Positions 14,045 to 17,849 of a DNA stretch of 64,000 bases are shown here, one piece after another. Location of the stretch: contig OZ281500.1 of the NCBI GenBank assembly GCA_965637545.1, positions 8,184,001-8,248,000 on the forward strand, in the 5' to 3' direction. The DNA comes from Phallusia mammillata (lineage: Eukaryota). The position numbers were made by a program, and so were the translations under genes. Under the pieces are notes generated by a model. It did no database searches. It was given only the letters and a program-made list of their open reading frames with translations, and had not been told where the DNA came from. How positions within the stretch are numbered: position 1 is the first letter of the stretch; each line of letters starts with the position of its first letter.

Positions 14045-17000
14045 TTAGCTTAGAACTCTTGTTTCGTCCGCGGCATTGTAAAGAACATTGGAAACTTCGT
14101 TCAATTGATCAGCAGTTAATTGGAGAACGCTCGTCAATTTGTCATCTTTGTCACCTAAATCAAATTAATGTTTAGCTTTACACAAAAATGGAAATCTTCT
14201 GCAAGGTAAAAAGTTTTTTTTAGCAATAACAGGTATTTAAAAACAATCAGCCAATTCAGGGTCATATTTCAAATGTATAAAACGGTAAGGCGTAAAGACG
14301 CACTTGAGTGTAACCAGGATTAAGTATTCAAGAAAGGCAACTAAGACGAAACCACTATCATTTTGCCAGCTTTCTTTTCCAGTTGGTAAACAAACACCCC
14401 CGTGTGAGCCAACCGTTAAGAGTAATGTTTGGTTTCAAACAGGCTATCATTCGAAACGAACCGTTGGGGGAAACAATGGTGTAAAATAACACACCGTTCT
14501 GTCGAGCACCACTTATTGACATAACTGCCCGCCGAAACTCGATAACGTTATATGTTGGCTGGGTGTTAGATTAGTAAACGACACACTTACCACTGGTTGA
14601 TGATCCGTCCCTTTGGTTGCCCTATACAAAATAAAATTTATGTAGATTTTAAGCTAAGCATACAAAAACAATTGCAGTTTGGTTGGCTTTAAGTCCAACC
14701 GTACCCGAACACTAACTTACTTTGCAAGGAACCATGTCACACTGGTCGGTCTGATAATCGCTGCTTTCCCTTCTAGTGGAGTTTTCCAATAGTTGCATGG
14801 CTGCAGGTGAAGCCTTACTACTGAAGGACGATCGACCATGCGAACCTAGCGCTGGTGGCAATGGTAGAAAACTCTCTGTGCTAACAGCATCTGAACGAGG
14901 ACTGTGCATTGTGTCTTTGAAATCAGTTTTAGGTGTATCCCGGTCGTAATTTCGTCGATAACGACTGGGTTCCGATTTCAGCTTGCTGTCCATCTTTCTC
15001 TGTGCATAACGTTCACCGGCATCACCATACGTGGAGGTTAATTTGTATTCATTCTTCCGTTTATCAATGGGACTGTTTAACAACAGTCTTTTAGCGTTGC
15101 TAAGGACCTCATTGCTTCTCTTGTATTCTTGTTTAAGCAGATCACCAGCGGATGTTAGAAAATCCTTTTCGTGCAAAAAATCGGGCCTGTACAAAGCAGT
15201 AGTGGCACTTCCATTTCCATCCGTAGTTTCGGAAGGTGTGCTCAGGCTGTACACACGAATAGGGTCAGATGAACTGGACGGGACTTTCTGCCTAAGCTTT
15301 TCCCATTGACTTGGGCGCCTGGCATGAGCTTTGCTAACGGACTCGGCTTCGCAAGCTCTGCTGACAAAATCGTGAAACTTATCATCGAATTTGGAATACC
15401 TGATTGGTGAAACATAAGGCCTTGCTGATTCCCGGTTGTAGTAAGGTTTGCTGGAATGAGATACTTGTGGCGGAATCCTATCTAAACCTAAGGCGGATAC
15501 CCTGCCTGGCTGGTTGACAATCTCAGGACGGCCTATTTGCTCCTGTAGACCCTTTGATACATATCTAACTTCGTTGCATGGTGTTGGATCTTTACGATTT
15601 TGTGTTTGGGTACTCGAAACCAATTGACTGGACTTGTAAGATCTTGTGTGTGATGGTCCCATTGTTCCATGTTTTCCCTGAGGTTCAACGGTTTGCCCTG
15701 GATCCACAATAGAAGTGCTGGTGGTATGGCGCCTAGATGAATCTGTGTGAAAAATTAAAAATGTTAATTATGTGGTAAAATATGACATTTTGATGTGCTG
15801 TACCAGTCATTTGGGAGGACAGAGATGTTGTATCATGAGATGAAGATCCCATGTCCGAAGTGTCCATTCTGGAAATACCCAACACTTTTAGGTTGTCACT
15901 CCAATCCTCTGGGAGTCCCATTGTTTCCAGCTCAAGAATAATTTCCTTAAAAGTCACATCAAAACCATTGGATGTTTCATGTAAACCTTTTTGGCAAATA
16001 AAAAAAAATCATACCTTGAATGTTGGTCTTTGAATGGGTGATGTGGCCCAACACTTTGATATTAGGATGTGGAAAGAATGAGGTAGCTCAGGTCCCAAAG
16101 GAAGTCTTTCATTTTTTTGCAGCATGTCCAAAATCTGTTGTGCACATTAAGTTTAAAGTGTTGTGCAACAAAGATCAAATTATTAACTAACCTCAGAAGT
16201 GGACAAGCCATTTGCTGGGTCACTACATGTGTGACATTGCCATAACAATACTGCATATGCAAAGACATCAATTTTTCCAGTGAGTTGTACAGGAAAACTT
16301 GTCAATTCCGGAGCAAGGTATGCCAGAGAATTATGATGGGACAAACCGGCACTTAACCTATATTTAAAAGCATGGTTTATGTAAGTAATACTGGATATTA
16401 ACATCAGTAGCAAAAAAGTAGAAAAAGTACCTGATTTTTGAAAATCCGAAATCAGTAACCTTGGCTCTGCCAAAAGTGTCAATTAAAACATTGGATGGGC
16501 GTAGGTTAAGATGCAAAACTGGAGGCTTTTGGTTATGCAAGTATGCCATACCAATGGCAACATCTCTGGAGATGCTAAAGAATTGACCAGGAGACAATCT
16601 GCCACCTGTTTTGCACTTACATGTTAAATCATAACAACAACACACCACTTATTTTTAGGTGATGTGTAATGATCAACATTTGTCAATAAAATAATTACCA
16701 AAACTTGAGCAGCATTATACACAAAACTAGATACAATCTAAATGTCTTCAATATCATAACAAAATTACCTGAACTTTCCAATGTCATCAGTAAAGTTTTT
16801 CCATGAACCAATTCCAGTACAATCAGTGGTTCCATTGAAGACAAGCAGACACCAAGAATTTTGACAATATTTCTATGTTGGAGGTGGATGAGTAAACCAG
16901 CTTCAGCAGACAGATAACTGCAGTCAGATGATGTCATCATACCTAGCTTGGAAATTTTTTTGACAGCAACTTGTTTTCCATTAAAGGTTCCAGAATAAAC

Positions 17001-17849
17001 AGTAGCAAGGTGGCCCTCTCCAATAACATTGGTATTGTAATACACAACATCACTCAGGGACAATTCCGGAGATTTTATAATGTTGTCCTTGCCTCTCTTT
17101 ACAAGCTTTAACTCAGTTTGCAGTCGCAAGACTTTGTGCTTATACTTGTCTCTTTCGGAATGCAGTTTCTTAATTACAGACTCCTGAGTATTACGTTTTC
17201 GAAATGTGGAATGGTAGGCTTGAACATTAGGCAACTCATTCTCCATATTACTTGCATCATATAGTGGCTTGGAGTTCTTTTGAATGTTTACTCGAATCAC
17301 AGAGTTAGGATGCATTGGGTTGTGAATGGAGTGTTGTAAATCTCCTGCCATCATAGGGTGGTCACTTTTTTGAGAATTTGTAAGATGTGCTTTCTCCATT
17401 GGATTGTTAGCTTCAGACTTTGCAAAGGAGCGATTAAGTGTTTCTTGATTAACTTTCAGTTGATTAATTTGTTGTTGTAAGTCAGCACACATTCTTTTAG
17501 CATCCAGCAAAGCATTGGTCTCATGTGGCTTAGAATAGGTTAGTTCAAAGGGTTGATTTTCATCATTTGACTTGGATCTAGAAGAACTAGATTCGCTTGT
17601 GGTTGTTGACTGATAAATTTCAACTGCAGACTTCATATCTCTTTCATGGTGACTGGGGTGAACCTGTTCTTTAGCAGCTTTGGACTTTGTTAACTTGGTA
17701 GTCCTCTTTCTACCTGAAGGTTTAACTGAAAAGCCTTCCATTTTGCCAACAACAGAGCGACGCTGTGAAGCCATAGTGGGCCTTAAAAATCCAGCTGATC
17801 GACTATGTTGGTTCACACCAGAGGACATTTTCTTCAACTTCTGAGGCAT
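14045..17849 (-). CDS. Coiled-coil plus TKL/RIPK-like protein kinase-domain protein, predicted pseudokinase, 948 aa
   Basis: Exons 17849-16769, 16605-16431, 16357-16192, 16134-16015, 15945-15804, 15742-14721, 14621-14591, 14154-14045. Sum 2847 nt, in frame. Motifs IGEGHLATVY, VAVK, HRNIVKILG, GMAYLH..PPVLHLNLRPSNVLID, DFG, YLAPE, IDVFAYAVLLW, CW....QRPTF. The last two small exons are less certain. Confidence 0.88.

What the first reader, a model, noticed from the sequence alone, without database searches (positions are those of the whole stretch)
14045..17849. Coiled-coil RIPK/TKL-like pseudokinase with an unfamiliar architecture
Seen: the catalytic loop is HLNLRPSN, so the catalytic Asp is replaced by Asn and the Lys by Arg. 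The third Gly of the G-loop is Ala (GEGHLA), while VAVK, the alpha-C Glu, the Mg-binding Asn, DFG and APE are intact. The domain is preceded by about 275 aa with two heptad-like segments (LLDAKRMCADLQQQINQLK; VIKKLHSERDKYKHKVLRLQTELK). It is followed by an about 400-aa S/R-rich tail ending in a helical-looking peptide (LTSVLQLTADQLNEVSNVLYNAADE). Established: PPxLHxxLxPxN resembles RIPK4/ANKK1 (PPLLHLDLKPAN), and Asp-to-Asn loops mark pseudokinases that may still bind ATP. I do not recognise a named ortholog. Inference: a conserved-fold, catalytically dead oligomerising scaffold or allosteric switch.
Basis: partly seen in the sequence, partly recalled or inferred. Interest (0 to 1): 0.72.

Follow-up and report, generated by a model that had tools for sequence, protein, structure and literature searches.

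The report
Sea-squirt dead version of a kinase
This sea-squirt gene encodes a protein kinase whose catalytic aspartate became asparagine in all sampled tunicates, while nearly all relatives in lancelets, echinoderms, molluscs and crustaceans keep it; this is an ordinary kind of event in a kinase family nobody has studied.

Summary
Window 14045-17849 (minus strand) is an intact 8-exon GT-AG gene for a 948-aa protein. It matches the deposited Phallusia mammillata protein CAB3263628.1 at 947 of 948 residues.

The catalytic loop reads HLNLRPSN and the glycine loop GEGHLA. The beta3 Lys, alphaC Glu, Mg-binding Asn, DFG and APE are intact. Two helices precede the kinase and a 403-aa Ser-rich tail follows it.

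The interpretation needs correcting in two ways.
- **Not RIPK-like overall.** A profile of the domain matches CTR1, ZAK and TNNI3K at about 1e-43 and RIPK4 at 2.6e-35. The RIPK4 likeness is confined to the catalytic-loop exon.
- **Not an orphan.** It is the tunicate branch (support 100/99) of an uncharacterised bilaterian TKL family. Those relatives share the pre-kinase helix and a post-kinase extension, and most carry a SAM domain. In them the loop reads HLDLKSMN in 40 of 42 sequences.

Tunicates lost the SAM domain and fixed Asp-to-Asn, and also changed the glycine-loop Phe and the P+1-loop GT. They kept every nucleotide-binding residue, under strong purifying selection.

Most likely reading: a lineage-specific pseudokinase that still binds nucleotide and works as a coiled-coil scaffold or allosteric partner. 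No paper names any ortholog.

The parts
14045..17849 (-). Whole coding region: 8 exons, 948 codons plus stop
   Evidence: GT-AG exon model read. Exon translations match P0004 at 947 of 948 residues. Orthologous exons found in other ascidian contigs.
17775..17792 (-). N-terminal motif G-F-L-R-P-T (residues 20-25). It is tunicate-specific and nearly invariant.
   Evidence: G20, F21, L22, P24 and T25 are invariant in alignments A1/A2. The motif is absent from 14 non-tunicate family members. A variant GFMRxT occurs in metagenomic relatives.
17412..17516 (-). First predicted helix / heptad segment (residues 112-146)
   Evidence: AlphaFold helix 112-146, pLDDT 73-85. Conserved L114, A117, M120, C121, L124, Q127, I128, L131, K132 in A1. 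The a/d spacing was read directly from the sequence.
17082..17186 (-). Pre-kinase helix (residues 222-256), shared with the whole bilaterian family
   Evidence: AlphaFold helix, pLDDT about 90 in its core. It is a conservation island at residues 225-247. It aligns with the pre-kinase helix of amphioxus, echinoderm, mollusc and crustacean proteins.
16015..17063 (-). Kinase domain (residues 263-514) across exons 1-4
   Evidence: Pfam PK_Tyr_Ser-Thr 6.6e-45 and Pkinase 1.5e-36. Model pLDDT 84.8. Foldseek top hits are DLK, BTK, TNNI3K, ZAK and CTR1.
17004..17021 (-). Glycine-rich loop GEGHLA
   Evidence: The family-invariant Phe at the loop tip is Leu or Ile in all tunicates.
16490..16513 (-). Catalytic loop H-L-N-L-R-P-S-N. 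The Asn394 codon AAC lies at 16505-16507.
   Evidence: The column is N in 4 of 4 full-length tunicate proteins, D in 40 of 42 other family members and D in 9 of 9 outgroups.
16306..16453 (-). Activation segment from DFG to APE (25 residues; interrupted by the intron at 16358-16430)
   Evidence: It is 24-25 residues in tunicates against 26-32 in the eight other family members printed. The GT(P)AWMAPE motif is replaced by variable xxLAYLAPE.
15838..15945 (-). Post-kinase extension (residues 515-550; L-E-T-M-x-L-P-x-D-W ...), shared with the family
   Evidence: Extra helix at model residues 323-332, which are P0004 527-536, at high confidence. It aligns with L-E-x-L-x-F-P-x-E-W-R in the family. 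The amphioxus protein gives a weak, sub-threshold Pfam PBD hit here.
14045..15852 (-). Ser-rich, mostly disordered tail (residues 546-948; exons 5-8) with short conserved islands
   Evidence: pLDDT below 50 over most of it. Composition and islands at residues 681-691, 723-728 and 774-784. Tail helices predicted at 679-700 (window 15327-15392) and 757-783 (window 15078-15158).
14048..14152 (-). C-terminal peptide encoded by exon 8
   Evidence: tblastn match to locus L001 (E 0.001) and a loose alignment with Styela. No confident helix in the model.

Best explanation
This is the Phallusia mammillata member of a tunicate-wide group of orthologs. The group descends from an uncharacterised bilaterian TKL (MLK-like) kinase family. 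That family has a long N-terminal region (usually with a SAM domain), a pre-kinase coiled-coil helix, a kinase domain and a short helical extension.

On the tunicate stem the gene did four things:
- It lost the SAM-bearing N-terminus.
- It gained a short basic N-terminus with a G-F-L-[KR]-P-T motif.
- It evolved fast (stem branch about 1 change per site).
- It replaced the catalytic base Asp with Asn, and also changed the glycine-loop Phe, the residue three after the base, and the GT of the P+1 loop.

Since then it has been held under purifying selection. The beta3 Lys, alphaC Glu, Mg-binding Asn and DFG Asp are intact.

Shown: the gene structure, the fold, the family membership, the pattern of substitutions and the selective constraint.

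Inferred: phosphotransfer is abolished or very weak. The pocket still binds nucleotide. The protein works without catalysis, as a dimer or oligomer held by the pre-kinase helix. That assembly would scaffold or allosterically regulate partners recruited by the N-terminal motif and by the short conserved islands of the disordered tail.
For: Gene model and identity:
- The exon model equals the deposited protein.

Asn in every tunicate-type sequence examined:
- Phallusia (window).
- A closer relative in run DRR090687, 84% identical in exon 2.
- Two further ascidian genomes or contigs, L001 and L002.
- Clavelina, two Ciona and Styela.
- A metagenomic relative, P0101.

Family membership:
- The tunicate profile scores 230-312 bits on amphioxus, hemichordate, echinoderm, mollusc, nemertean, brachiopod and crustacean proteins. 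Full-length kinase domains of every other kinase held score 175 bits or less.
- In the tree, tunicates plus this family form one clade with support 100/99. The tunicate stem is 1.05 changes per site.
- Family members read HLDLKSMN: Asp in 40 of 42 and Lys in 41 of 42.
- SAM domains occur in many non-tunicate members. None is present in the tunicate proteins or in the window.

Constraint and conserved residues:
- Against the DRR090687 ortholog, non-synonymous differences are 0.09-0.25 per site while synonymous sites are saturated at 0.79-0.94.
- K297, E316, N399 and D412 are kept in all four full-length tunicate proteins.

Precedent:
- HER3 and the JAK JH2 domains carry Asn at this position. 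They bind ATP and act mainly without catalysis (PMC4718504).
- Asp-to-Asn versions of RIPK4 and CTR1 were crystallised. The substitution is a standard way to inactivate a kinase (general knowledge, not checked here).
Against:
- HER3 and JAK2 JH2 keep weak activity despite the same Asn. Conservation of all nucleotide and metal ligands is equally what a slow but real enzyme would show.
- Dimerisation through the helices rests only on heptad spacing and monomer AlphaFold helices.
- The full-length model is poor (pLDDT 47), so nothing can be said about docking of the tail.
- Orthology, as opposed to an old paralog whose active twin was lost, rests on the tree and on finding no other tunicate family member in a word-indexed search.
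Confidence: 0.6

Rival explanations
1. It is still a working, if unusual, protein kinase. The Asn, perhaps with another residue or substrate-assisted catalysis, supports slow but biologically relevant phosphotransfer or autophosphorylation.
For: - Every ATP and metal ligand, both spine-forming residues (His of the catalytic loop, Phe/Tyr of DFG) and APE are conserved across ascidian orders.
- HER3 and JAK2 JH2, which have the same Asn, show weak activity (PMC4718504).
- Arg two residues after the base is compatible with catalysis. From general knowledge, Src-family kinases read HRDLRAAN; this was not tested here.
Against: - Asp-to-Asn is the standard kinase-dead substitution. The best solved matches for the loop are engineered dead RIPK4 and CTR1.
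- The change comes with loss of the glycine-loop Phe and of the P+1-loop GT, which contacts the catalytic loop in Ser/Thr kinases, plus a shortened activation segment.
- The family tolerated loss of the base independently in Pomacea and full degeneration in Lingula. This points to an important non-catalytic role.
Confidence: 0.22
2. It is a RIPK-family member (RIPK4/ANKK1-like) that lost its ankyrin repeats.
For: The catalytic-loop exon's best kinase match in the PDB is RIPK4, with PPxLHLxLKPxN shared.
Against: - Whole-domain profile: CTR1 4.6e-44, ZAK 1.7e-43, TNNI3K 4.3e-43, against RIPK4 2.6e-35.
- Foldseek top hits are DLK, BTK, TNNI3K, ZAK and CTR1, with no RIPK in the first 50.
- No ankyrin, death, CARD or conserved RHIM-like element (direct reading).
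- The protein sits with 100/99 support inside a different family.
Confidence: 0.04
3. It is a decaying gene or an annotation artefact with no function.
For: Long low-complexity regions, and a poor full-length structure model.
Against: - An intact 948-codon frame over 8 canonical exons.
- Orthologs in all three ascidian orders with 49-59% identity over the helix-to-extension region (residues 222-575) and conserved short motifs.
- Non-synonymous change far below saturated synonymous change.
Confidence: 0.02

Closest known systems
Uncharacterised bilaterian SAM-plus-TKL kinase family (e.g. Branchiostoma XP_035681333 'pakF-like', Ptychodera XP_070553545, Patiria XP_038055741, Haliotis XP_046561668, Macrobrachium XP_066951802)
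   Same: Pre-kinase coiled-coil helix, kinase domain (31-36% identity to the window's protein) and post-kinase L-E-x-(L/M)-x-(F/L)-P-x-(E/D)-W helix. One clade with support 100/99.
   Different: - Those proteins keep HLDLKSMN, GEGxFS and GTPAWMAPE.
- They are 900-2300 aa, with 350-1100 aa before the kinase, usually including a SAM domain.
- The tunicate proteins have Asn, no SAM, an unrelated N-terminus and an unrelated tail.
MLK-type MAP3Ks and relatives: ZAK/MAP3K20, DLK/MAP3K12, MLK1/4, TNNI3K, plant CTR1
   Same: Best whole-domain sequence and structure matches. Like ZAK and the MLKs, the wider family combines a kinase with coiled-coil and SAM elements. Like TNNI3K, this protein has a coiled coil before the kinase and a Ser-rich tail after it (general knowledge).
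   Different: - Only about 28-29% identity.
- The domain order differs: SAM and coiled coil lie before the kinase here.
- No ankyrin repeats.
- The catalytic Asp is replaced.
RIPK4 / ANKK1
   Same: Local motif PP(V/L)LH-L-x-L-(K/R)-P-x-N around the catalytic loop, and the non-RD 'HL' form.
   Different: Weaker over the whole domain, no ankyrin repeats, and a different clade.
Pseudokinases with Asn at the catalytic-base position: HER3, JAK JH2 domains
   Same: Asp-to-Asn in the catalytic loop with a usable nucleotide pocket. Those proteins bind ATP and act mainly as allosteric partners (PMC4718504).
   Different: - They are tyrosine-kinase-group domains that also lack the canonical Lys-Glu pair. 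This protein keeps both Lys and Glu.
- They have obvious active partners (HER2/EGFR, JH1). No partner is known here.

Membership tests
Eukaryotic protein kinase fold, TKL group | Significant match to the Pkinase / PK_Tyr_Ser-Thr profiles over the whole domain | tested here: met
   PF07714 6.6e-45 and PF00069 1.5e-36 over residues 272-519. Each exon also matches separately.
Eukaryotic protein kinase fold, TKL group | Bilobal kinase structure closest to TKL and TK kinases | tested here: met
   Model pLDDT 84.8. Foldseek hits DLK, TNNI3K, ZAK, CTR1 and BTK at E about 1e-17 with target-normalised TM 0.78-0.89.
Pseudokinase (sequence definition) | Lacks at least one of the beta3 Lys, the catalytic-loop Asp or the DFG Asp | tested here: met
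   The catalytic-loop Asp is Asn394. Lys297 and Asp412 are present.
Pseudokinase (functional definition) | No phosphotransfer activity | not testable with these tools
   This needs a kinase assay. HER3 and JAK2 JH2 show that this Asn can leave weak activity.
Bilaterian SAM-TKL kinase family (uncharacterised) | Kinase domain clusters with the family to the exclusion of other TKLs | tested here: met
   Clade support 100/99. Profile scores are 230-312 bits for family members; full-length kinase domains of all other kinases held score 175 bits or less.
Bilaterian SAM-TKL kinase family (uncharacterised) | Pre-kinase helix and post-kinase helical extension | tested here: met
   Both align across the family and are modelled as helices.
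Bilaterian SAM-TKL kinase family (uncharacterised) | SAM domain upstream of the kinase | tested here: not met
   No SAM hit in four tunicate proteins or in the window. SAM is also undetected in several non-tunicate members, for example crustaceans and Antedon, so it does not strictly define the family.
Bilaterian SAM-TKL kinase family (uncharacterised) | Catalytic loop HLDLKSMN | tested here: not met
   Tunicates read HLN(L/I)(R/K)P(S/C)N.
RIPK family | Kinase domain closest to RIPK1-4/ANKK1 | tested here: not met
   RIPK4 scores 2.6e-35 against 4.6e-44 to 6e-43 for CTR1, ZAK and TNNI3K. No RIPK appears in the Foldseek top 50. No RIPK sequences were available to place in the tree.
RIPK family | Partner domain (death, CARD, RHIM or ankyrin) | tested here: not met
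   No such Pfam hit in the window's protein or three orthologs. The only Q-I-G-like stretch in the tail is not conserved in L001.
MLK family (MAP3K) | Orthology to a named MLK subfamily (MLK, DLK/LZK, ZAK, TAK1, ILK, TNNI3K) | tested here: inconclusive
   DLK and a Capsaspora MLK fall outside the clade. ZAK, TNNI3K, ILK and TAK1 could not be placed in the tree because no session sequence was available for them.

The most novel reading that the evidence does not exclude
Tunicates turned a MAP3K-like enzyme of a still-undescribed invertebrate kinase family into a nucleotide-sensing, coiled-coil scaffold with a new N-terminal docking motif (G-F-L-[KR]-P-T) and a new tail. This gave it a tunicate-specific signalling role. 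Independent loss of the catalytic base in Pomacea and Lingula would mean the whole family already works largely without catalysis.
Probability: 0.3. Interest if true: 0.6.

Novelty: new member of a known kind. Interest (0 to 1): 0.45.

Why it matters
Pseudokinases are common, so one more is no surprise. This case is unusually clean, though. The catalytic base was lost once, on a datable branch (the tunicate stem). Active-looking orthologs survive in amphioxus, hemichordates, echinoderms, molluscs and crustaceans. The nucleotide pocket has then been conserved across ascidian orders that differ by 40-50% within the domain.

That gives a natural pair (amphioxus or sea-star enzyme against the Ciona or Phallusia protein) for asking what a kinase fold is kept for after catalysis goes. 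Ciona and Phallusia are also organisms where knock-outs and live imaging are routine.

The work also exposes a conserved bilaterian kinase family that no search here found in vertebrates, insects or nematodes, and that has no name and no literature.

Tried and rejected
- **Joining the exons.** Searches were done exon by exon by reference. Full-length work used the database protein P0004, which a search returned.
- **RIPK reading.** Rejected on profile ranking, fold search and the tree.
- **RHIM in the tail.** The only Q-I-G-like stretch is not conserved in L001.
- **Homology of the N-terminus or tail to the non-tunicate family.** blastp found nothing at E below 1. tblastn and blastp with the SAM and flanking regions found only chance-level hits.
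- **Full-length AlphaFold model.** Too poor to use beyond secondary structure (pLDDT 47).
- **NCBIfam.** Only sub-threshold bacterial kinase families.
- **Literature.** No paper holds any of five ortholog accessions. The oyster kinome paper only mentions four unclassified TKLs.
- **PP1 SILK-type site.** I considered reading the N-terminal motif this way, from memory only. No RVxF partner motif is conserved, so I dropped it.
- **PAK-type PBD after the kinase.** The only evidence is a sub-threshold Pfam hit in amphioxus (E 0.0094). It is kept as a note, not a claim.
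Full report
**What is in the window.** The region lies in AT-rich animal DNA (about 38-42% G+C locally). It holds ORF pieces on the minus strand that together make a kinase. Reading the minus strand gives eight exons with canonical GT-AG borders:
- e1 17849-16769
- e2 16605-16431
- e3 16357-16192
- e4 16134-16015
- e5 15945-15804
- e6 15742-14721
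- e7 14621-14591
- e8 14154-14045

The ATG at 17849 is preceded by an in-frame stop.

Each was searched by reference. An exhaustive HMMER search with exon 1 returned a 948-aa database protein, P0004. This is CAB3263628.1 / A0A6F9DKW8 of Phallusia mammillata, auto-named 'probable serine/threonine-protein kinase DDB_G0267514'. All eight exon translations match it exactly except residue 515, which is Glu in the genome and Val in the entry. So the window comes from this sea squirt, as earlier notes on neighbouring DNA suggested. The gene model has independent support. P0004 was used for all full-length analyses.

**Check of the observation.**
- Glycine loop GEGHLA
- VAVK (Lys297)
- AlphaC Glu316
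- Catalytic loop HLNLRPSN (Asn394, codon AAC at 16505-16507)
- Asn399
- DFG (Asp412)
- APE

 Pfam places a protein-kinase domain at residues 272-519 (E 6.6e-45).

The two heptad-like segments are predicted as long helices, residues 112-146 and 222-256. Their hydrophobic residues fall at 3-4-3-4 spacing (direct reading). The tail, residues 546-948, is 15.6% Ser and 7.9% Arg and is almost wholly low-confidence in the model. The C-terminal peptide is a separate small exon. It has a weak match in one other ascidian genome.

**Conservation within tunicates.** Exon 1 alone found first-exon ORFs from three other species at 66%, 42% and 38% identity. Their contigs carry the downstream exons. Full-length RefSeq orthologs, all annotated as 'uncharacterized protein', exist for:
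- Clavelina lepadiformis
- Ciona intestinalis, plus a second, near-identical Ciona-like sequence (P0154, source unnamed)
- Styela clava

 These cover the three ascidian orders.

All read H-L-N-(L/I)-(R/K)-P-(S/C/G)-N. All keep Lys297, Glu316, Asn399 and Asp412. Ciona keeps Lys two residues after the Asn, so the Lys-to-Arg change is not general.

Against the closest relative, non-synonymous differences are 0.09-0.25 per site while synonymous sites are saturated at 0.79-0.94. This indicates strong purifying selection.

Conservation islands outside the kinase are:
- The N-terminal G-F-L-(R/K)-P-T motif
- The pre-kinase helix
- Three short stretches of the tail

Two short metagenomic relatives carry a G-F-M-R-x-T version of the N-terminal motif. 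One of them shows HLNLKPSN with DFA. They may come from other tunicates, but their source is unknown.

**What family it belongs to.** For the catalytic-loop exon alone, the best kinase in the PDB is RIPK4. Tellingly, this is the engineered D143N protein, which reads HLNLKPAN.

Over the whole domain the picture changes. With a profile of five tunicate sequences (four species; alignment A4), the scores are CTR1 4.6e-44, ZAK 1.7e-43, TNNI3K 4.3e-43, RIPK4 2.6e-35 and DLK 9e-35. The top row of that table is a tandem EGFR construct counted twice, so I disregarded it. A confident model of helix plus kinase plus extension (pLDDT 84.8) is closest to DLK, BTK, TNNI3K, ZAK and CTR1, with no RIPK in the first 50.

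**The wider bilaterian family.** Full-length kinase domains of all other kinases held score 175 bits or less. About 50 proteins score 230-312 bits and align from the pre-kinase helix to the post-kinase extension. They come from:
- Amphioxus
- Hemichordates (Ptychodera, Saccoglossus)
- Echinoderms (Patiria, Acanthaster, Asterias, Amphiura, Antedon, Anneissia)
- Molluscs
- A nemertean
- A brachiopod
- Malacostracan crustaceans

All are 'uncharacterized' or carry automatic names. Most have a SAM domain several hundred residues before the kinase.

A maximum-likelihood tree (35 rows, LG+C20+F+G4) puts the four tunicate proteins and 14 of these proteins in one clade with support 100/99. DLK, a Capsaspora MLK, plant and protist TKLs, giant-virus kinases and Abl/BTK fall outside. 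The tunicate stem is 1.05 changes per site, against 0.29 for the amphioxus terminal branch.

A search seeded with the amphioxus domain found no vertebrate, insect or nematode member; the best vertebrate hit is MAP3K12 at 39% identity. It also found no second, conservative tunicate member. That search depends on shared 5-residue words, so it could miss divergent members, but it would not miss a 50-60% identical one.

**What changed in tunicates.** At the catalytic-base column, 40 of 42 non-tunicate family rows have Asp. The exceptions are Pomacea, which has Asn, and Lingula, whose loop is wholly degenerate. All 9 outgroups have Asp and all tunicates have Asn.

Other positions that are at least 90% conserved in the family but changed in every tunicate include:
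- The Phe at the tip of the glycine loop (to Leu or Ile)
- Ser three residues after the base (to Pro)
- Trp and Met of the GTPAWMAPE motif

In addition, the G-T of that motif is replaced by variable residues, and the activation segment is shorter, 24-25 against 26-32 residues.

Tunicate proteins have no SAM domain. Their N-termini and tails show no detectable similarity to the rest of the family.

So the shared core is about 340 residues: helix, kinase and extension. The flanks were replaced. The damage is concentrated on catalytic and substrate-positioning elements, while the nucleotide and metal ligands are untouched.

**Most likely mechanism.**

Shown:
- An intact, constrained gene with a kinase fold
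- Membership of the family
- A single dated loss of the catalytic base, with correlated changes

Inferred from established knowledge:
- Asp-to-Asn at this position is the usual way of making a kinase-dead protein.
- Natural cases (HER3, JAK JH2) still bind ATP and act chiefly as allosteric partners or scaffolds, with at most weak activity (PMC4718504).

I therefore think the tunicate protein is a pseudokinase that binds nucleotide. It probably pairs through the pre-kinase helix, as its MAP3K-like relatives do through leucine zippers (general knowledge). It probably uses the N-terminal motif and the tail islands to hold partners. I put about 0.6 on this whole statement. The evolutionary part is much firmer (about 0.85) than the scaffold part.

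The main rival, a slow but real enzyme, gets about 0.2. A RIPK family member or a dead gene are each very unlikely.

**Novelty and limits.** The protein sequence is already public but carries only an automatic name. No paper mentions any of five ortholog accessions. The kind of thing, a lineage-specific pseudokinase, is well known. The particular family and its conversion in tunicates are, as far as I could find, undescribed.

Limits:
- Coiled-coil pairing and partner binding are untested.

Noticed in passing
window 15943-15945 (first codon of exon 5): The genome reads GAA (Glu) where the deposited protein P0004 has Val at residue 515. Orthologs have Glu or Asp, so the database Val is probably a polymorphism or a model slip.
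   Followed up: partly
P0298 (Pomacea canaliculata) and P0299 (Lingula anatina), catalytic-loop column of alignment A5: Two non-tunicate members of the family have also lost the catalytic Asp. Pomacea reads HLNLKSMN. Lingula is fully degenerate (VLELNTTH, with the DFG Asp also gone). The family may be prone to becoming non-catalytic.
   Followed up: partly
P0029 (amphioxus) residues 1018-1046, equivalent to window about 15850-15940: The post-kinase extension gives a weak, sub-threshold match to the C-terminal half of the Pfam P21-Rho-binding (PBD) domain (E 0.0094). This may explain the automatic 'pakF-like' name. It is unproven.
   Followed up: no
L002-L005 (ENA ERZ27241785/6/9 and JGI 3300001463 metagenome contigs): Contigs of 14-24 kb in 'metagenome' assemblies are ascidian nuclear DNA. 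They carry this gene next to CENP-W and Cox11-like genes, so there is host DNA in microbiome datasets.
   Followed up: no
P0101 and P0388 (metagenomic proteins): Short relatives carry a GFMRxT N-terminal motif only 20-30 residues from the start, and a shorter N-terminal region. P0101 has HLNLKPSN and DFA instead of DFG. They may be pelagic tunicate versions; the source organism is unknown.
   Followed up: partly
P0109 (Moumouvirus) and P0313 (Mollivirus): Giant-virus Ser/Thr kinases are among the best non-family matches to the tunicate profile (175 and 145 bits). They group together in the tree, outside the animal family.
   Followed up: no
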